Source: Magallana gigas
Lineage: Eukaryota
Length of the DNA: 64,000 nt
Assembly (NCBI RefSeq): GCF_963853765.1
Contig: NC_088858.1
Coordinates: forward strand, 22,630,001-22,694,000
Direction of reading: 5' to 3'
In this document: positions 5,520 to 61,988 of the stretch, piece by piece
How the letters are laid out: the number at the start of each line of letters is the position of its first letter
Numbering within the stretch: position 1 is the first letter of the stretch
Program-made: the position numbers and the translations under genes
The notes under the pieces: model-generated
Database searches by the model: none
Seen by the model: the letters and a program-made list of their open reading frames with translations, nothing else
Told to the model about the DNA's origin: nothing

Positions 5520-6201
5520 CATTTTGTTTTCCCTTGGTCTGAAATGTCACACTTTCATTGGTTTAAACATAGCACGTGATTGCCTCATATATCTCTATTA
5601 TAATATTTGTTCTGTGAGAAATAATATTAGGCAATATGGCCGTCATTGGTCGACGCTTCGCTTACTCATTTCGACATTTCATAGTATTTAATACATAAAC
5701 CGCATGCCGTAAGTTCTTAAAGTATTTGGAGTAGTTGCCCTTTGAAATTCTTTAAAATTAGAGTAGTTGCCCTTAGAATATTGACGTCACATTGTTTTGT
5801 CTGGAGCAGAACAAAATGGCAGCGTCGAATTTTGCTCAAATATCTGCAGAGGAAAGGGGGAAAACATTTAAAATTGAATAGCAACAAAACCTTGTAAGTA
5901 AACATGGCTGAAGCAAGGATTTTTAAAGATTATTTGAAAGGCGAGATTGAAAATTTTGAAGAGTTTAAATGAGTTAAATTGGATGAGATGTTAGGCATCT
6001 TGTACATGGCTAGATCATCGCTATTTGTGAATAAATATGTCGCTTGATAGTCCTCGGGAAAACAAAACACTTATAAGGTTAGTTACTGACTCACTACGGA
6101 AAAATATTGGGTTGATCAATCTCATAGAAGGCTCGGCTTCGCCTCGCCATCTATGAGATTGATCAACCCAATATTTTTCCGTAGTGAGTCAGTAACTAAC
6201 C
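5520..6201 (+). mobile_element. Crypton-like (tyrosine recombinase) non-autonomous relic
   Basis: ~5910-6012 translates as ARIFKDYLKGEIENFEEFK*VKLDEMLGILYMAR, resembling the N-terminal region of Crypton YR proteins. It is flanked by a long palindrome with a ggcttcgcctcg loop. Confidence 0.55.
6077..6201. repeat. Long palindrome/hairpin with 51-bp perfect arms
   Basis: ggttagttactgactcactacggaaaaatattgggttgatcaatctcatag, then loop aaggctcggcttcgcctcgccat, then the exact reverse complement. Confidence 0.95.
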
Positions 6202-35383: not shown

Positions 35384-37934
35384 TCAATAAGCTCCTATAA
35401 CATGTGTACAAGAAGCAGAAGCGCTTGCTGAAAGCGAGGCAACTTTTTAAAAAATTGTTACACTACCAGACATAGCGCCCATTGGATCCAAAGGATTTCC
35501 GCCTGGGGGCAGTCCGCCAGGCATCATGGGATTGGAGGCGGTCCCACTGCTACTATCTGCCAATGACAATAATGTTCAAAATATAAGTGGAAACTTTATA
35601 CATCTCTGTATATTTATCTTTATTTTTGAGAATATACAAAATGTACGAACCGCTCGTTCGTCCAGTGACAGATGACGATCCCGTCATAGTGTTCATCATG
35701 TTCATAGGACCGGAAGTCCCTCCTCCGGACCCCCCGGAAGACCCGCCCATCATTGATCCCATTGGATTAAACATGTTGGATCCACCACTTGTACTGCCCC
35801 CGCTGGCTCCACCGTTAACCTGACTGGCACCACTCATCATCCCAGGGGATCCACCCATTAGTGAGCTGGCGTCCATTTTATTGGGGTCACCTCCACCAGC
35901 ACCTTATGGAATTCGTGATCAGTGTATATTCAGTTCAAACATATATATTAAAAATGTTTTTTCATATTGAGCGTTCTTTAATTCGAAAAATTTTGATTTC
36001 CGCATTATTCTGCAATTACCAAGACTCGTTTGAAAAACTGTAGTCACTTTGCTACATATCTATAAATACATATTCTAATCATGTTGGAAAAAATCAATGT
36101 TAATAAGTAAAAAAAAAATTAAAAACGCCCACCTCCAAACATGTTCAGACTTGCGCCCTGTACTGCCATTTGAGTGTTTACTGCTCCAGGATCAAATACT
36201 CCTCCGCTTGCTAAAAAAACAACAACATATTCTTTACAGACTGCTTTAAAAAGACAACAATGTTCAGTCTTTTTTTTAACAATGTTGCACTTACAGCCCG
36301 ACTGGGGTCCCATGAAGTTTTGAACTTTTCCTGCAAGATAACAAAATAGTTTTTTGATTTTTTTTAGCATCATCATGTTAAAAGAACTCGATTGTGGTTG
36401 CCATTTTAAGACTTTATTGATCTCATTTAGAAGAAGATCTATGTATGAAAATCCCAAAATTAAAAAAGTTAAATACGAGTATATGAATTTATCTTTGCAT
36501 GGTATCACATTTATTTTCAAAACTCACGGATCAAAATATCCAAGTTTACAGTGTGTTGCAAGGTTAAAAATGCTTAATAAATACCTAACGTCGGGCTTAA
36601 AGGGTTGAATCCAGATTGTGTGGTCTCGACATTTGTTTTGATGGGATCAAACGACGGCACCGCGGCCCCACCACCGGAAGTCTGTGCTGATCCACTTCCC
36701 GAGCTGCTAGATCCGCCTTGTGTACTTGTAGGAGAGCCAAAAGAGCTTGCCCCTCCTTGTGTCGAACTTGCAGAACCAGTCGGACTGCCAAACGAAGTAG
36801 CACTACCGCTCCCAGAGGTCCCTGTTGAAGATCCCGTTTGACTACCAAAAGAGGAGGCGCTGCCACTTCCAGATGAACTCGTTCCAGATCCACTTGGGCT
36901 TCCAAACGAGGAAGCACTGCTGGTTCCTGTAGAACTTCCAGATGAAGATCCCGAGCCAGACGGACTTCCAAACGCCGACGCCCCACCTCCAGTACTAGAA
37001 CCTCCTTGAGTCATCGTGCCAGCGGATCCTGACTGCTGTGCGGTACCACTGCCGCTTGGCATGGTTCCCCCTCCCATGGACTGCTGTTGCGCGTTCATGC
37101 CCATCCCATTAGTAAACGTTGGAGCATTGCCCCCTGTTCCCTGTCCCGAGTTTGCTGCATTGGGGTCATATCCCCCTGCCATGTTTACTGCACCGTTATT
37201 GGGATTGTAACTCGGCGTTAATGAAGCAGACGACCCAGCCTGACCTCCTCCTCCCATTTGTGACATAGGATTGGTAAACTGAGCACCACCTTGTTGGTTG
37301 GGATTGAAACTGCCTCCAAAAGCAGACGTCCCCGATGTAGAGCTTGATCCACTGGTGCTTCCTGCCTGTTGTCCACTGGAGCCACTCGACTGTTGGGTTG
37401 ATCCTCCGCTACCCAGCTGGTTGGGATTGAAACCACCACCCAATCCGCTGGTGGAAGTCCCTGACGTGCTGCTCAGCTGATTGTTGAGCTTTGTGGGATC
37501 AAATGTTGCCGAGCTCCCGGATGTTTGCGACGAAGGTTGGCTGTTAGTCTGGGATCCCGGATTAAACATATTCATTCCGCTCCCCATACTGCTCATCATT
37601 TGGTTGGGATTAAACGATCCCATATACTGGGAGGTGCTCGAAGTACTACCTCCTCCTCCCCCTCCAAACATCATAGAGTTAGGATCAAAAGTTTGTCTTC
37701 TCGCTGCCGAATTTGCTTAAATCAAAGTACATGTACATTATTGTTAAAACTCTGCTTTGAAAACAAAACAATGAAACATGTTTATATAAACCGATGTCAA
37801 ACATCAGCGGGATTAGTTATGAAATGGATATTAAGAAACTTACCAGAAGCAAGTCTTCGGAATTCCAAAACATACCGGTTCGGTTCTGCTGATATGGAAT
37901 ATATCAATGTAAATAAAAGTACTTTTGGTAGCAT
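35384..37934 (-). CDS. Secreted Gly/Ser/Met-rich FDPN-repeat protein B (~560 aa); last exon uncertain
   Basis: Exons 37934-37844 (MLPKVLLFTLIYSISA signal), 37715-36585 (AARR|QTFDPN...), 36330-36295, 36210-36133, 35902-35651, 35556-35467, and probably 35394-35384 (GAY*). Confidence 0.75.
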
Positions 37935-39830
37935 TTTGCTTTTCTGTTAGTAAATAGGCTACGAGGAATTATAGAAGCGGTCACTCTAAACTCTAAGATA
38001 CATGGTAGATAAGGCATGTTACAGAATCACTTTATACCGTGTTTATAAATATATCGATAAAGTGTTGAGTTTCACGAACTACAAGTAAAGGCATTCTACT
38101 ATTATAGGACATTCTTTATTGATATTGAAATATCGTGAAACAAATATTATGTTAATGAGAATCTGTACAGTATTTAAGGTATATTTTCCAGACGATTTTG
38201 TGACAGTTTCCTCTCCGGAATTCAGCATAAGAAATAATTGCTGCAATTTGTTAAGATTCTGGCCAATATAACTAAAAATAAAGAGAGAGACTTTGTGCAT
38301 TAAAAATGGCAATGTGTAAAATAAACACTTGTTTCAAACCCAATACAATTTCATTTATGTGTTATGTGTATAGTAAGGGAACCAAGATCTGAAGTCGACC
38401 ATCGTCAACACCAATGACCAGGCACGCAAGTATCTTTATTGACCTTGGGTCAACTCTTTAAACATTTGTAGTTTTCATGAATATTAATACATGTAATTCT
38501 ATACCCAACAAGGGGAAATCAACATATTTTAGTTATAATATGATTTATGAAAACAAAGTTAATGCGGACGTTTATATATGCATGCGTAGGCATTAAAACG
38601 AATAGGGGATTTCCTTTAGGAAAGGATGAAGGAGCCAAATGGAAAAGGTCATGAATTATTCATGAGAACGAGAGAAATTCAATGAGTTGACCACCAGTCA
38701 ATAAGTGTGATCGAGACTGACCACTGACCTTTGACAATTGCTGTAGTCTATAGCATGTATGTGCAAAATAAGCTCTAAGGGGATGGACATCAACATACAA
38801 TTTAAAAAATCTCACCAGATGTTTAAATTATGTAGTAGAAATTATATTAAAATCAGTCAGCTAATTAATTCCCTCAAATGATAAAATACAATAATGGTAT
38901 ATACTGATAGTATTCTGATACCTTTTTATCGTATATATAATACTGCGCCATTTTGTTTGATATTGTTTTATCATGTCATATCACTCTTAAGTAATAGTCC
39001 TTGCTCGCGTCACAGATTTCCTTCTGATTTGCTCTATCTTGTCTAGTGAATACAGTTCACCTGTTTCTGTGCTGGTCACAAGAACACGTTCGGTCGAATA
39101 TTTCAATGATAAGTATGGTCTTATCTACTATCAGTATATTCTGCTATCGCGATAGGTGCGACAGATGTTAAGTGGAGGTCATTTGTATACAACCATGGAT
39201 TTTATAAGTCAGTGCGACTTATCAATGTCATGCTTATTTACTAGTATTTAGTATGACTATCTAAACAGCATTTATTCCCGAATCATATTGATAATCCAGG
39301 GAATTAGGAACATTTGTGATTGATTTATCAGATTAAAAAAAATCTTTATTTTTATGATTAGAATACTTGTAATCTTACAAGAACATGTACTCTATTTTTA
39401 AAAGTCTTATCGTTAACCCAAACACTCCATATCTCATTATTTCAACAAAAAATGTTTCAAATGTTATTCTTCAATAGGTAGTTTATTAATCCAGATGCTT
39501 CTTTAATCCAGATTATATCTCAATTAAAATAAAAGCTATCAGAATAACGATCCAATCTAAATTGTTCTTTTAAAAATTGGATTATCATGAAAGGAAACGA
39601 TTTCATGACGTGATTTTTTAAATGATTAATTTGGTATACAACTTTTGGCCTTTTTATTGAAAAATAACAATCAAAATACAATTCAAGCTGTAAAAGGTAC
39701 AATGTGGAAAAGAAAAAACAAATACCGGAAATTAATTGAACCAGTAACCAGCTTGAAGATACAAAGATATAATTTATTTTTCTTTTAAAACACATGGAAA
39801 ATTGTATATCGCTCGCTTATCCTTTTAAAT

Positions 39831-42276
39831 CTATCGCCGCCCAAGAAGATTTTGAGGATTAAAGAAGTTGAACGACAGGGTGTTAACTGCATCAGGATCG
39901 AATCCCCCGGCCGCCGAACCACCAGATCCAAGTTGTGCTTTGGAAGGGTCCAAAAAACTAGATTGGATTTGGTTAACTTTGTTTGGATCAAAAGAAGGCT
40001 GCTGTGCACTTCCACTGGAAGAGGAAGAAGATGATGAAGAGGATGAAGATGAGGACGGACTTCCGCCACTGGTCCCGGAACTACCGCCATTTAAAAATGC
40101 GCTCGGATTTATGAACATATCTGGACTCATCATTTGTGATGATGCACCGGAAGTGCCACTTGAGCTGCCACTGGTTGATGACCCGGATGATGCACTACTT
40201 GAACCAGAAGTTGACGTTTGACGTTTTCTAATACCTGGAATATCGTTAAATGCTTGATAAGTATCATAAAGTACATGAATCAAACTCTGTTACAACGTAA
40301 ATTAGCAGATTTTTAAATTATATGTTATTCGTCGAGACCATGTACTAGTAATTAAGTTTTTTAATGCCATATATTCTTTTGAGAGCAAAATGAAAATTAC
40401 TCTTCTAGTTCTGAAAATAATTACAAATACTCACTTCTTCTCCCGACTTGAGCTTGTGGATTAAAGAAATTGAAAGACATGGTGTTAAACTGATCGGGAT
40501 CGAATCCTCCAGCTGCCCCACCACTTGCTCCAAGCTTTGAGGATGAAGGATCCAGCATGTTGGACTGGATTTTGTTAACGCTGTTGGGATCGAATTTGGG
40601 CGTACTACCACTACTACCACCTGAACCACCACCACCACCGCCTCCTGACATCTGGTTGGGGTTGAAGAAGTTGAACTGCATGGTATTGAGTTGGTCTGGG
40701 TCAAAGCCCCCGGCAGCACCGTTGCTGGCTCCAAGTTTGGAAGAAGATGGATCGAGCATGTTAGCTGTCAGTTTGTTGACACTGTTTGGGTCGTAGCTTG
40801 GAGGACTGCTTCCACCACTGCTGCTGCTACTTCCGCTGCCGCTTGGCCCGGATGGTGAGCTTTGGCGTTTATGAATAACTAAAATATCAGTCATATAACT
40901 ATTTTATCAAAAATGCATCATCATCATCATCATCGTCGTCGTCATCGCTGCACAACGGTCTAGGTTCAAAGATATATTTTCTTACCTCTTTTTCCAACTT
41001 GAGCTTGTGGGTTAAAGAAATTGAAAGACATGGTGTTAAACTGATCGGGATCGAATCCTCCTGCAGCCCCTCCGCTTGCTCCGAGCTTTGAGGATGAAGG
41101 ATCCAGCATGTTTGACTGGATTTTGTTAACGCTGTTGGGATCGAATTTGGGCGTACTACCACTGCTACCACCTGAACCACCACCACCACCACCACCACCG
41201 CCTCCTGACATCTGGTTGGGGTTGAAGAAGTTGAATTGCATGGTATTGAACTGGTCTGGGTCGAAGCCTCCGGCAGCACCGTTGCTGGCTCCAAGTTTGG
41301 AAGAGGATGGATCGAGCATATTAGCTGTCAGTTTGTTGACACTGTTTGGGTCATAGCTTGGAGGGCTGCTTCCACCACTGCTGCTACTTCCACCGCTTGA
41401 AGTCTGTCGTCTTTCTTTAAATTGAAGATGACGAAAATCGATACAATTAAACGAATCAAAGCGTTGTTAACATACAGTATAAAAACTTGAAAACACTAAC
41501 TTCTTCCTGATGGACCACTATTTCCACCATTACTCAAGAGAGCGCTGGGGTTGAAGAAGCTGAAGGCCATGCTGTTAACCTGGTCGGGGTCGAATCCCCC
41601 TCCTCCTCCGCCAGATTGGCCAAGCTGAAGCTTGGAGGGATCTAAGAAGCTAGCATGAATGTTGTTGACCTTGTTAGGGTCGAATGATGGAATTAATGAA
41701 CCACTGCTGCTTGAAGATGGTGATGATGAACCACCACTACTACTGGACCCACCACTCATGGTGCTGCTGGATCCACCACCACTTGGGTTTGAAGGGGAGG
41801 ATCTAAAATATCGTGAATTTCTTTTACATACAAATGATAAATGAAAAAAACCAAATGTAGTGAACTATTTCTTAGATTAAAGAATGTGGATTAAGGTGGG
41901 AAAGATATGTACATACGCACTTGAGCCACTCATGAACTGTGAGGGGTTGAGCAAGAATGATGGTGGCTGCATGTTTTGTGAGAGTTGTTGACTAGAACCG
42001 GATCCGCCACTTGATGTGCTTGTACTTCCGCCAGTTCCGCTACTGCTTGACCCGGAACTAGTGCCACTAGTTCCGGTGCTAGTACTTCCTGTTTGTGTTT
42101 GGCGGACTGTAACATTACGAACAAAATTGGGAAATATCCTCATAGTAAATATATTTATTTTGAATCCTTTAATAACGAATTTTAATACGGGACCGAAATA
42201 GGACCTTACCTCTGAGATATCGAGCATTTCCGCCCGTAGAAATGACTGCCACGACGAGGATGACAGACAGCCACAT
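39831..42276 (-). CDS. Secreted Gly/Ser-rich FDPN-repeat polyprotein D (~611 aa, four modules)
   Basis: Exons 42276-42210 (MWLSVILVVAVISTGGNA signal), 42106-41917, 41802-41501, 41414-40986, 40878-40435, 40234-39831. Junctions read LRVR|QTQ, SGRKRR|QTS, VGKR-VIHKR|QSS and VGRR-SIRKR|QTS. Ends LLGRR*. Confidence 0.88.
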
Positions 42277-42657
42277 AGTACACCTGACTCTGATGGCTGT
42301 GTTTTGTCAGTATTTGTTATTGTTAATTCGATAGTTCGAACCTACAATTCCGTAATGATCACGTAATGATGATAAATTGTGGTCAATCTAACGATTCTAC
42401 TGTTTCAAGAAATAGTACGAGATCTTATCTTCAGTAGCTCACGAGGTTGTGATAAGAGCCACTGTCCAGTTAGGGTGCTGGACAGGTGAACGATAGAACA
42501 CGGTAAATGGTCTGATGTATCTGGTGGTCAGTGGTTATACCAGCCAAGATTTACATTGCCATAGAAATAGGGAATTTTTACAACATTGAAACAATGACGA
42601 ATGTACAGACTTGTCAAAATTTCATGTTTTCTCATTCTTGTGATGGTTAAAGACAAA

Positions 42658-46935: not shown

Positions 46936-47084
46936 NNNNNNNNNNNNNNNNNNNNNNNNNNNNNNNNNNNNNNNNNNNNNNNNNNNNNNNNNNNNNNNNN
47001 NNNNNNNNNNNNNNNNNNNNNNNNNNNNNNNNNNNNNNNNNNNNNNNNNNNNNNNNNNNNNNNNNNNNNNNNNNNNNNNNNNNN
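46936..47084. other. Assembly gap (N run)
   Basis: ~150 N characters. Confidence 0.99.
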
Positions 47085-61134: not shown

Positions 61135-61988
61135 TTAAATATTATATGTTCTTCTTTTCCTTTTTCCAACTAGAAATGCACCGGGATTTAGAAATTGTGA
61201 GGGTTGGAAAAAATTCGTTGAAAATGAAGTTCCACCAGGCGAAGTGCTTCCGCTTCCGGTCTGTTGCTGAAATTGGTTCCCGCTTTGTTGATTGGTTGTG
61301 ATCCCTCCATTCAAATTCAGGTTTTGAAAATTATTGAAAATTCCCAGAGATAAGAAAAGATTTGGTTTACTCAAGTTCCCAGGTTTTTGGAGTTGGTTAG
61401 TACTGGTAATTCCATTTGCAGTTATAGACGATCCAGAACCCAAATTTGAAAATTGTGAATTTCCAAGATTTAGAACAGGAGAAGGGTCGATTAAGTTTTG
61501 CTGAAAAGACCCGGATGAACCATTGATTCCGGACGAAGCTCCTCCAACCGATGACTGAAAACTCGGATCAATGATCTGCTGAGGCATCGGTGCAGAATTT
61601 CCGGTTCCTCCTCCACCATTTCCGGAATTGAAGAACGAGGAAGAGCTGTCTGTCTGACGAAGAATTCTGAGAATGTCTGGAATAAGAATTTAAAAAGTCA
61701 TATTTCTCTCTTTATCGGGAATATGCACGTGTTTCTTATGAATGTACATTTTAACTTTTACCTACAATGTATATAAAAAAATCCATTAGGTATGTTGTCA
61801 TGATCGTTCACTACTACATTTACATCAAGTCCGAATCGTTTTAGGTCAAGTTTCTAAGACAAATGACCAAATCATTGCGGAAACTAAAAAAAAAAGACAG
61901 GAAACAATATCTCACCCGTTTTTCCAGCAGTGAATGTTAAATTCGTAAGAAGACCGATGAAAACAAACAACTGAAAGAAAGGAATCAT
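61135..61988 (-). CDS. Secreted Ser/Asn/Gln/Gly-rich protein J (~204 aa)
   Basis: Exon 61988-61916 (MIPFFQLFVFIGLLTNLTFTAGKT, phase 1) plus exon 61676-61135 (DILRILR|QTDSSS...FLNPGAFLV-GKRKRR-TYNI*). Confidence 0.85.

What the first reader, a model, noticed from the sequence alone, without database searches (positions are those of the whole stretch)
39831..42276. Gene D is a four-module polyprotein whose modules follow exon boundaries
Seen: cleavage and amidation sites sit at the exon junctions. Exons 41414-40986 and 40878-40435 are near-identical phase 1-1 duplicates. Short spacers (VIH, SI) separate the amidation site from the next KR|Q. Inference: the gene grew by symmetric exon duplication, releases a stoichiometric set of four capped chains, and permits in-frame exon skipping or copy-number variation.
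Basis: partly seen in the sequence, partly recalled or inferred. Interest (0 to 1): 0.72.

Follow-up and report, generated by a model that had tools for sequence, protein, structure and literature searches.

The report
Exon-modular secreted polyprotein of bivalves
This oyster gene is real and transcribed, and it encodes a secreted serine/glycine-rich protein built from four cassettes. Each cassette is bounded at an exon junction by conserved cutting, amidation and pyroglutamate signals, so it belongs to an uncharacterised bivalve family whose products nobody has yet seen as proteins.

Summary
Spliced RNA contigs from two studies confirm a six-exon minus-strand gene (42276-39831) encoding 611 aa, and both quoted exons are exact and phase 1-1.

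- **Processing sites.** After the signal peptide, four chains of 160, 137, 140 and 126 aa each start with Gln after a basic site. Each ends with Gly followed by two to four basic residues. All 14 arginines lie within 4 residues of a phase-1 junction or the C-terminus (P about 3e-14).
- **Repeat unit.** The chains carry six copies of a 46-aa unit. In this genome the unit occurs only in this gene.
- **Relatives.** Related sequences occur in a scallop, two unionid mussels and mussel-like or unidentified bivalve contigs, and every named one is called 'hypothetical'. The same Gly-basic / intron / basic-Gln layout is seen in the five related loci read at DNA level.
- **Duplicated exons.** Exons 4 and 5 are 94% identical only in a core of about 392-401 nt (dS 0.27, dN 0.007). 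Their heads and flanking introns are unrelated, which points to an old duplication with later gene conversion.
- **Not shown.** Release of four capped chains is inferred, not demonstrated. Neither exon skipping nor exon copy-number variation was seen.
- **No known relatives or fold.** Pfam, the PDB sequence search and the papers searched gave nothing, and AlphaFold2 found no confident fold.

The parts
42210..42276 (-). Exon 1. It holds the ATG at 42276-42274, the signal peptide (aa 1-18, 42276-42223) and the start of the pro-hexapeptide RYLRVR. It ends in phase 1.
   Evidence: Joint 42106/42210 in X1 and X7. Translation. An in-frame stop lies 13 codons upstream and there is no upstream ATG within 150 nt.
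41917..42106 (-). Exon 2. It begins ..VR|Q, holds the Ser/Gly/Thr-rich start of module 1 with the F.LNPS.F motif, and ends in phase 2. The donor is at 41916, not at the stronger-looking GT at 41920.
   Evidence: Joint 41802/41917 in X1 and X7. My first model, ending at 41921, broke the frame; the RNA-supported end restores it. An orthologous exon occurs in L011 at 5620-6054.
41501..41802 (-). Exon 3. It holds the rest of module 1 with 46-aa unit 1 (41684-41547) and ends ..SGPS-G-R + 1 nt (phase 1).
   Evidence: Joints; units. Orthologues are P0009, P0039, L012 and L011 6664-7149.
40986..41414 (-). Exon 4 is module 2. It starts (K)RR|Q, holds units 2 and 3 (41355-41218, 41145-41008) and ends ..QAQV-G-KR + 1 nt. 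It is 429 nt, phase 1-1.
   Evidence: Joints 41414/41501 and 40878/40986. X16 contig 40763-41041 spans intron 4 with no differences. The orthologous exon with the same head is in L012.
40435..40878 (-). Exon 5 is module 3. It starts (V)IHKR|Q, holds units 4 and 5 (40795-40658, 40594-40457) and ends ..QAQV-G-RR + 1 nt. It is 444 nt, phase 1-1. Its core is 94.4% identical to the exon 4 core.
   Evidence: Joints; alignment; dS 0.27 and dN 0.007. Head is like that of exon 6. One extra Gly codon behind 40624 in X16.
39831..40234 (-). Exon 6 is module 4. It starts (S)IRKR|Q, holds the F.INPS.F motif, a Ser run and unit 6 (39992-39855), and ends ..QNLL-G-RR-TAG (stop at 39833-39831).
   Evidence: Joint 40234/40435; translation.
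40865..40995 (-). Junction 2|3, G-KR-VIH-KR. Intron 4 (40985-40879) sits 1 nt after the KR codons, inside the discarded spacer.
   Evidence: The same intron position and phase occurs in L005, L006, L011 and L012.
40221..40444 (-). Junction 3|4, G-RR-SI-RKR. Intron 5 (40434-40235) sits 1 nt after the RR codons.
41407..41507 (-). Junction 1|2, G-RKRR, a furin-type R-K-R-R site. Intron 3 (41500-41415) sits inside it.

Best explanation
Gene D is the single oyster member of an uncharacterised, apparently bivalve-restricted family of secreted precursor proteins.

**Shown**
- The gene is transcribed and spliced as six exons.
- The product has a signal peptide followed by four acidic, Cys-free, Ser/Gly-rich modules of 12-15 kDa.
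- The modules carry six copies of a strongly constrained 46-aa unit: [FY]DPN.VN..., LDPS...LG, GGFDPD..N, F.FFNP.
- Every arginine sits at a module border, and each border lies at a phase-1 intron.
- The border grammar (Gly, then 2-4 basic residues, a short spacer, a basic site, then Gln) and the intron position are conserved in other bivalve lineages.

**Inferred**
- In the secretory pathway, furin/PC-type convertases cut after the basic sites.
- A carboxypeptidase trims the basic residues.
- Peptidylglycine alpha-amidating monooxygenase turns each terminal Gly into a C-terminal amide.
- The new N-terminal Gln cyclises to pyroglutamate. The spacers VIH and SI and the hexapeptide RYLRVR are discarded.
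- The result is four exopeptidase-resistant chains in 1:1:1:1 ratio.
- The chains are predicted to be largely disordered.

My best guess is that they act outside the cell as a multivalent matrix or mucus-type material, held together by the conserved aromatic/Asn/Pro motifs. Function is the weakest step of this account.

**Evolution.** One exon equals one released chain, so chains can be gained or lost without breaking the frame. The oyster gained a second two-unit exon, and its core has since been homogenised with the first.
For: - **Splicing and transcription.** Joints in X1 and X7, zero intron depth, and full DNA coverage in X16.
- **Protein and phases.**
- **Arginine placement.** All 14 Arg lie within 4 aa of a phase-1 junction or the C-terminus, P = 3e-14. 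There are four G[KR][KR] sites, against a shuffle maximum of 3.
- **Selection.** Unit 2 versus unit 3 shows 24 synonymous and 6 non-synonymous codon differences. Exon 4 versus exon 5 core gives dS 0.27 and dN 0.007.
- **Unit length.** Exactly 46 aa in 33 of 34 units from oyster, scallop, unionids and mussel-like contigs. Every unit that ends a module is followed by Gly and then basic residues or a stop.
- **Basic-Gln starts in relatives.** VKRQ, LTRQ, MRRQ, ARRQ, SKRQ, GRRQ, NRRQ and RRRRQ.
- **Intron position.** A phase-1 intron 1 nt after G-[KR]R occurs in L005, L006, L011 and L012.
- **Family size.** Only 23 hits among 1.84 billion representatives, and 29 in the 5.8-billion set; every named one is 'hypothetical'.
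- **Uniqueness in this genome.** The unit occurs only in gene D.
- **Disorder.** AlphaFold2 gave pLDDT 55.6 and pTM 0.15.
- **Expression breadth.** The spliced transcript is held by 14 RNA-like runs from 6 studies, which fits an abundant product.
- **Neighbourhood.** Neighbouring genes are also Ser/Gly-rich with FDPN motifs and G-[KR][KR] exon ends.
Against: - No peptide, N-terminus or C-terminal amide has been observed, so processing is read from sequence alone.
- Products of 126-160 aa are far larger than typical amidated peptides.
- The first site (RYLRVR|Q) is not a classical furin site.
- The tissue of expression is unknown, because run metadata are coded.
- The raw poly-A run X20 gave no reads, which is no test.
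- The matrix or mucus role rests only on composition, predicted disorder and the kind of neighbouring genes.
- An invariant 46-aa unit length is unusual for a purely disordered spacer-and-sticker protein. It may mean a fold or a specific partner that AlphaFold2 missed.
Confidence: 0.55

Rival explanations
1. It is a precursor of regulatory or defensive peptides, such as a neuro/endocrine hormone, a pheromone or an antimicrobial peptide. Processing would be as described above, but the active entity would be a receptor- or membrane-directed peptide: either the conserved amidated tail (F.FFNP....-amide) or the 46-aa unit. The Ser/Gly stretches would be mere linkers.
For: pGlu plus amide capping is the hallmark of bioactive peptides (established knowledge, e.g. 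the TRH precursor). The amidation Gly and the F.FFNP tail are the most conserved positions. In the scallop protein P0003, single units of about 60 aa are each flanked by KR|Q and G-RR.
Against: The chains are 126-160 aa, acidic and low in complexity. The peptide strings are absent from the text and held supplements of two oyster neuropeptide surveys, and from the text of one scallop survey. The transcript is assembled in many RNA-like runs from six studies, which is unlike a rare neuronal message. No further internal basic sites exist to release short peptides.
Confidence: 0.2
2. It is an unprocessed Ser/Gly-rich secreted mucin- or matrix-like protein of about 60 kDa. On this view the basic clusters at exon borders are charge patches or binding sites rather than cleavage sites, and the exon-module match merely reflects exon duplication.
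For: Composition is 26% Ser and 17% Gly with no Cys. There is no confident fold. The gene sits in a cluster of similar low-complexity genes. No product has been observed.
Against: Gln follows the basic site at 4 of 4 borders and in nearly all relatives. Gly precedes the basic site at 4 of 4 borders and in all relatives. In L005 and L010 the last module ends in Gly-stop, an amidation signal with no basic patch at all. Arg is wholly excluded from module interiors.
Confidence: 0.15
3. The exon 4 / exon 5 pair is an assembly artefact: one exon written twice.
For: The cores are 94% identical. Short-read contigs break inside them, and one X7 contig of exon 5 carries five exon-4 states at 40511-40532.
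Against: The two exons have different heads, and both heads are joined in RNA contigs (3-to-4, 4-to-5 and 5-to-6) in two studies. X16 contig 40763-41041 spans intron 4 and both exon ends with no differences. The cores differ at 22 aligned sites plus a 9-nt indel, and nearly all the codon differences are synonymous.
Confidence: 0.02

Closest known systems
Multi-copy prohormone or neuropeptide precursors whose products are capped at both ends, for example the TRH precursor with repeated KR-QHPG-KR/RR (established knowledge)
   Same: A signal peptide is followed by repeated products. Each product is bounded by basic sites, with Gln as first residue (becoming pyroglutamate) and Gly before the basic site (becoming an amide). 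Short spacers are discarded and the products are stoichiometric.
   Different: The products here are 126-160 aa of acidic, Ser/Gly-rich, probably disordered chain, not 3-40 aa peptides. Each product is its own phase 1-1 exon. There is no sequence relationship, and the gene is absent from the oyster and scallop neuropeptide catalogues checked.
Convertase-cleaved tandem polyproteins with domain-sized units: nematode polyprotein allergens (ABA-1 type, cut at R-x-K/R-R), and the molluscan shell protein Pif, cut at a furin-type site into Pif97 and Pif80 (established knowledge)
   Same: Units of about 13-15 kDa are released from one secreted precursor at regularly spaced multibasic sites. Pif shows that bivalve extracellular matrix proteins use this route.
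   Different: There is no homology: Pfam gave nothing and the PDB sequence search gave nothing. Those units are folded and are not known to carry pGlu/amide caps. Here the units are low-complexity, and the cut sites coincide with introns.
Phase 1-1 exon modules of extracellular proteins: exon shuffling or duplication of symmetric exons (established knowledge)
   Same: Exons 4 and 5, the exon 2+3 pair and the orthologous exons in other bivalves are all phase 1-1. They can therefore be duplicated or lost in frame.
   Different: The module here is not a folded domain but a whole released chain together with its own processing signals. The intron lies in the few codons that are thrown away.
Low-complexity bivalve structural proteins: abductin, and the Ser/Gly/Asp-rich or Met-rich shell and ligament matrix proteins, e.g. 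those in PMC7591529
   Same: Secreted, Gly/Ser-rich and repetitive. Neighbouring genes in the window are Gly/Ser/Met-rich or Gly/Phe-rich.
   Different: No sequence similarity was found, and there is no evidence that gene D products occur in shell or ligament. The 46-aa unit is conserved in sequence and exact length, unlike simple compositional repeats.

Membership tests
Convertase-processed, amidated multi-copy secretory precursor (a functional class, not a homology family) | N-terminal signal peptide | tested here: met
   MWLSVILVVAVISTGGNA has a hydrophobic core and small residues at -3/-1. It starts at the first ATG, with an in-frame stop upstream. This was read by eye; no predictor was available.
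Convertase-processed, amidated multi-copy secretory precursor (a functional class, not a homology family) | Each copy is flanked by di- or multibasic sites, with no such sites inside the copies | tested here: met
   The sites are RVR, RKRR, KR..KR, RR..RKR and RR-stop. There is no Arg and no basic pair inside any module.
Convertase-processed, amidated multi-copy secretory precursor (a functional class, not a homology family) | Gly immediately before the C-terminal basic site (the amide donor), conserved in relatives | tested here: met
   Present at 4 of 4 borders in the oyster. It is an invariant column (G145) in the 20-sequence alignment. Two relatives end in Gly-stop.
Convertase-processed, amidated multi-copy secretory precursor (a functional class, not a homology family) | Mature products demonstrated, with cleaved ends, pGlu and amide | not testable with these tools
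   No proteomic data are reachable. The peptide strings occur in no relevant searchable paper.
Convertase-processed, amidated multi-copy secretory precursor (a functional class, not a homology family) | Products of peptide size (a few to a few tens of residues) | tested here: not met
   The predicted products are 160, 137, 140 and 126 aa.
Catalogued bivalve neuropeptide precursors | Listed in published oyster or scallop neuropeptide surveys | tested here: not met
   There are no matches to unit or tail strings in PMC8398477 or PMC4200219 (text and held supplements), nor in the text of PMC5996578. Only held text was searched.
Any curated protein family or solved structure | Significant profile match | tested here: not met
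   Pfam gave no hit at the gathering score for the modules, the neighbouring genes or the relatives. The best PDB profile match had E = 0.68. The Atlas gave no usable hit.
New bivalve 46-aa-unit family (defined here) | A 46-aa unit [FY][DN]P N.VN ... LDP ... LG ... F[DN]PD..N...F.FFNP, followed by Gly and then basic residues at the module end | tested here: met
   There are six units in gene D. The same unit occurs in Mizuhopecten KP79_PYT10582, Potamilus CHS0354_015535/015533 and Sinanodonta ACJMK2_037151, and in contigs L006, L010, L011 and L012.

The most novel reading that the evidence does not exclude
Bivalves may possess an undescribed class of large (12-15 kDa), intrinsically disordered secretory polypeptides that are capped at both ends, by pyroglutamate and amide, like neuropeptides. 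They would be produced from polyproteins in which one phase 1-1 exon encodes exactly one released chain, and the intron sits in the discarded spacer. That gene grammar is shared by oysters, scallops, mussels and unionids. It would let chain number evolve by exon duplication and conversion.
Probability: 0.4. Interest if true: 0.6.

Novelty: new variant of a known kind. Interest (0 to 1): 0.5.

Why it matters
If the four capped chains exist, this is a clear case of gene structure mirroring post-translational processing. Each exon would be a self-contained product with its own start and end signals, and the intron would be parked in the few residues that are thrown away. That arrangement explains how such polyproteins gain and lose products in frame.

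The finding also flags an expressed, selectively constrained bivalve protein family with no annotation. It sits in a cluster of similar low-complexity secreted genes. These are candidates for mucus, shell, ligament or adhesive material, or for a new signalling molecule.

The prediction is directly testable, because the four N-termini and four C-termini are specified exactly.

Tried and rejected
- **First gene model.** I ended exon 2 at the stronger-looking donor (41921), which broke the frame. RNA joints place the donor at 41916.
- **Tandem Repeats Finder.** It reported only short Ser/Gly codon repeats, not the exon duplication.
- **Pfam.** No hit at the gathering score for modules, neighbours or relatives.
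- **PDB profile search.** Nothing significant.
- **ESM Atlas.** No usable hit.
- **AlphaFold2 with a 20-sequence alignment.** pLDDT 55.6 and pTM 0.15, so no fold search was run.
- **The search for homologous proteins with the neighbour's 527-aa ORF.** This was meant to reach full-length proteins of about 600 aa. None of 8000 low-complexity candidates scored. Full-length orthologues of 611 aa could not be queried, because a spliced protein has no stop-free reference and I did not paste it.
- **The look-up of encoding contigs.** P0003, P0005 and P0025 were not on record.
- **Literature.** No relevant paper contains the peptide strings, and none the locus tags of the named homologues. The paper on Met-rich shell and ligament proteins gave no link.
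- **Raw poly-A run X20.** No reads were laid, so it is no test.
- **P0020 and P0022.** These long repeat proteins from the phmmer list were judged spurious on reading them.
Full report
**1. The observation**

On the minus strand the region reads as a gene with an ATG at 42276 and a TAG ending at 39831. I laid contigs of four public runs on 39700-42400.

Runs X1 and X7 come from two studies and are labelled only 'RNA?'. Both behave as RNA: depth is zero in every proposed intron, and their contigs carry five joints with CT..AC ends, which are GT..AG on the minus strand. The joints are 42106/42210, 41802/41917, 41414/41501, 40878/40986 and 40234/40435.

Run X16 covers all 30 bins, introns included, without joints. 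One of its contigs (40763-41041) spans intron 4 and both exon ends with no differences.

The exons are therefore:

| Exon | Window coordinates |
|---|---|
| 1 | 42276-42210 |
| 2 | 42106-41917 |
| 3 | 41802-41501 |
| 4 | 41414-40986 |
| 5 | 40878-40435 |
| 6 | 40234-39831 |

My own first model used the stronger-looking donor at 41920 and broke the frame. The RNA-supported donor at 41916 gives an open CDS of 1836 nt encoding 611 aa. The ATG is preceded by an in-frame stop, and there is no upstream ATG within 150 nt.

**2. Anatomy of the protein**

A signal peptide (aa 1-18) is followed by RYLRVR and then four modules.

| Module | Residues | Length | Exons | Followed by |
|---|---|---|---|---|
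| M1 | 25-184 | 160 aa | 2+3 | G-RKRR |
| M2 | 190-326 | 137 aa | 4 | G-KR-VIH-KR |
| M3 | 335-474 | 140 aa | 5 | G-RR-SI-RKR |
| M4 | 483-608 | 126 aa | 6 | G-RR-stop |

- Each module begins with Gln.
- The modules are acidic (pI 4.1-4.6) and contain no Cys or Glu.
- Over the whole protein, Ser makes up 26% of residues and Gly 17%.
- All 14 Arg of the protein lie at the five borders, each within 4 residues of a phase-1 exon junction or the C-terminus. The hypergeometric P is 3e-14, and 100,000 random placements never exceeded 8 of 14.
- G[KR][KR] occurs four times, against a shuffle mean of 0.28 and a maximum of 3.

The same grammar also holds at exon 1|2, where a phase-1 intron lies two codons before R|Q. 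Module 1 is the one exception to 'one exon, one module', because a phase-2 intron splits it.

**3. The repeat unit and selection**

The modules carry six copies of a unit of exactly 46 aa: one each in M1 and M4, and two each in M2 and M3.

- Units 2 and 3, which lie within one exon, are 87% identical in protein but only 72% in DNA. They show 24 synonymous against 6 non-synonymous codon differences, so synonymous sites are saturated while the protein is held.
- The exon 4 and exon 5 cores differ by dS 0.27 and dN 0.007.

This is a constrained sequence, not drifting low-complexity filler. AlphaFold2, run with a 20-sequence alignment, nevertheless found no confident fold (pLDDT 55.6, pTM 0.15, only three short helices). 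I therefore read the chains as largely disordered with conserved linear motifs. The invariant unit length leaves room for a fold or a partner that the prediction missed.

**4. The duplicated exons**

The high identity (370/392 aligned bases, 94.4%) is confined to an internal core. The first 28 and 52 nt of the two exons do not align, and the last 10 nt differ at three sites.

Introns 3, 4 and 5 show no local similarity above shuffles (scores 14 and 15, against shuffle means of 15 and 18). Segments that co-duplicated at dS 0.27 should still be about 77% identical. The head of exon 5 (IHKRQSSPSG) aligns with the head of exon 6 (IRKRQTSTSG), not with that of exon 4.

The simplest reading is an older duplication, possibly with breakpoints inside exons, whose core was later homogenised by gene conversion. 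A rival reading is a duplication of that age followed by complete intron turnover.

Signs of ongoing exchange or polymorphism:
- The one amino-acid difference inside the units (Leu versus Phe, 40690-40691) is Phe, as in exon 4, in X1, X7 and X16.
- One X7 contig of exon 5 carries five exon-4 states at 40511-40532. This could also be a chimeric short-read contig.
- X16 has one extra Gly codon in the Gly run of exon 5.

The duplication itself is not an artefact. The different heads of both exons are joined 3-to-4, 4-to-5 and 5-to-6 in RNA contigs.

**5. Relatives**

phmmer of module 3 against 1.84 billion representatives gave 23 hits, mostly exon-sized fragments. A profile search of the 5.8-billion set gave 29 hits. 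The named ones are all 'hypothetical protein':
- Mizuhopecten yessoensis KP79_PYT10582
- Potamilus streckersoni CHS0354_015535 and CHS0354_015533
- Sinanodonta woodiana ACJMK2_037151

The Potamilus assembly was identified through the paper that cites WGS project JAEAOA01. The remaining hits come from metagenome or SRA contigs of unidentified bivalves, one of them from a hydrothermal-vent sample.

Unit length is 46 aa in 33 of 34 units. Every unit that closes a module is followed within 4-10 residues by Gly and then basic residues, or by Gly-stop. Module starts read VKRQ, LTRQ, MRRQ, ARRQ, SKRQ, GRRQ, NRRQ and RRRRQ.

At DNA level, the phase-1 intron lies 1 nt after the G-[KR]R codons in Potamilus (L005), in the vent-sample contig (L006), in a mussel-like 10-kb contig (L011) and in a related oyster (L012). 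The next exon begins two bases before the basic-Gln site. L011 shows the same order as oyster exons 2, 3 and 4.

The two-unit exon is single and terminal in L005 and L010. The second copy and the extra C-terminal module are therefore additions on the oyster side, as far as these fragments show.

In the oyster genome, the unit occurs only in gene D.

**6. Surroundings**

The window holds further minus-strand genes with Ser/Gly/Gln/Met-rich exons studded with F[DN]P[NS]..N motifs. Their exons also begin ..RRQ or ..LRQ and end G-KRKR or G-RKR (36577-37716; 58043-59638 with 61138-61587). There is also a Gly/Phe-rich ORF on the plus strand (48777-48965).

The clustering recurs elsewhere. In Potamilus, CHS0354_015533 and CHS0354_015535 lie within about 30 kb on one contig. 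In L011, a 686-aa open frame full of such motifs lies just upstream.

**7. Mechanism**

*Shown:* transcription, splicing, protein architecture, site placement, selection, and conservation of both the sites and the intron positions.

*Inferred from established knowledge of the secretory pathway:* convertase cleavage after the basic sites, carboxypeptidase trimming, amidation of the exposed Gly by PAM, and cyclisation of N-terminal Gln. Together these would give four doubly capped chains in equal amounts.

The first site (RYLRVR|Q) has Arg at P1, P3 and P6 and is not a classical furin site. RKRR is classical.

Function is a guess. I favour an extracellular multivalent matrix or mucus-type role, on composition, predicted disorder, the cluster of similar genes, and assembly of the transcript in 14 RNA-like runs from six studies. 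A regulatory or antimicrobial peptide role is the main rival. The scallop relative, with single units of about 60 aa between KR|Q and G-RR, fits that rival better than the oyster gene does.

**8. Comparison with what is known, and novelty**

The gene works like a multi-copy prohormone such as the TRH precursor in its end-capping grammar. It works like convertase-cut tandem polyproteins (nematode polyprotein allergens, Pif) in product size. It is a sequence member of neither.

- Pfam, the PDB sequence search and the Atlas give nothing.
- No relevant paper contains the peptide strings, and none contains the locus tags.
- The strings are absent from the two oyster surveys (text and held supplements) and from the text of the scallop survey.

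Exon duplication of phase 1-1 modules is textbook. The new element is that the module here is a whole released chain with its own signals, that the intron sits in the discarded spacer, and that this layout is conserved across bivalve orders. I rate it a new variant of a known kind and of moderate interest. The weak points are the absence of any product-level evidence and the unknown tissue of expression.

No exon skipping was seen, and exon copy-number variation could not be tested. Contigs cannot exclude either.

Noticed in passing
window 58043-59638 and 61138-61587 (minus strand): A neighbouring gene has a 527-aa Ser/Gly/Gln/Met-rich exon carrying many FDPN/FNPN..N motifs and GGSSQMM repeats. 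Its upstream exon ends ..GAFLVG-KRKR, the large exon starts ..LRQSSFDPN, and it ends ..NPSQFIG-RKR. This is the same border grammar as gene D. Pfam gave no hit.
   Followed up: partly
window 36577-37716 and 35556-35903 (minus strand): Another Ser/Gly-rich gene has F[DN]P motifs. Its 380-aa open frame starts ..ARRQTFDPN. Pfam gave no hit.
   Followed up: partly
window 48777-48965 (plus strand): A short open frame carries FDPNAINQNFGSGGFGG... motifs. It is Gly/Phe-rich and reminiscent of abductin-type composition. It lies on the opposite strand to the other family members.
   Followed up: no
window 57277-57756: A tandem repeat is open in three frames (HHLHIIK-type, MVLYYMK-type and GALLYED-type ORFs). 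It looks like a minisatellite just downstream of the neighbouring gene.
   Followed up: no
window 46936-47084: A run of 149 N, either an assembly gap or masked sequence. I left it untouched.
   Followed up: no
L011 3-2060 (plus strand): In a mussel-like contig, a 686-aa open frame with about 25 F[DN]P..[VL]N motifs lies directly upstream of the gene D orthologue. It is not Ser/Gly-rich. The motif family is therefore wider than the 46-aa unit and is clustered in other bivalves too.
   Followed up: no
P0026, P0030, P0032-P0036 (mussel-like two-unit exons): The Gly/Ser/Ala linker between the two units varies widely (open frames of 144-192 aa), while the units themselves stay almost unchanged. The linker seems to be hypervariable in length. 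This parallels the 9-nt difference between oyster exons 4 and 5 and the 3-nt indel in run X16.
   Followed up: no
window 40511-40532 and 40690-40691: In other individuals' contigs, exon 5 carries exon-4 states. Five sites do so in X7, and the Leu>Phe pair does so in X1, X7 and X16. This is either short conversion tracts or, for X7, a chimeric short-read contig.
   Followed up: partly
window 41802, 40878, 40234 (acceptor sites of introns 2, 4 and 5): All three acceptors share the string GATATTYYAG immediately before the exon. Whether this is a remnant of common origin or a splice-signal preference was not examined.
   Followed up: no
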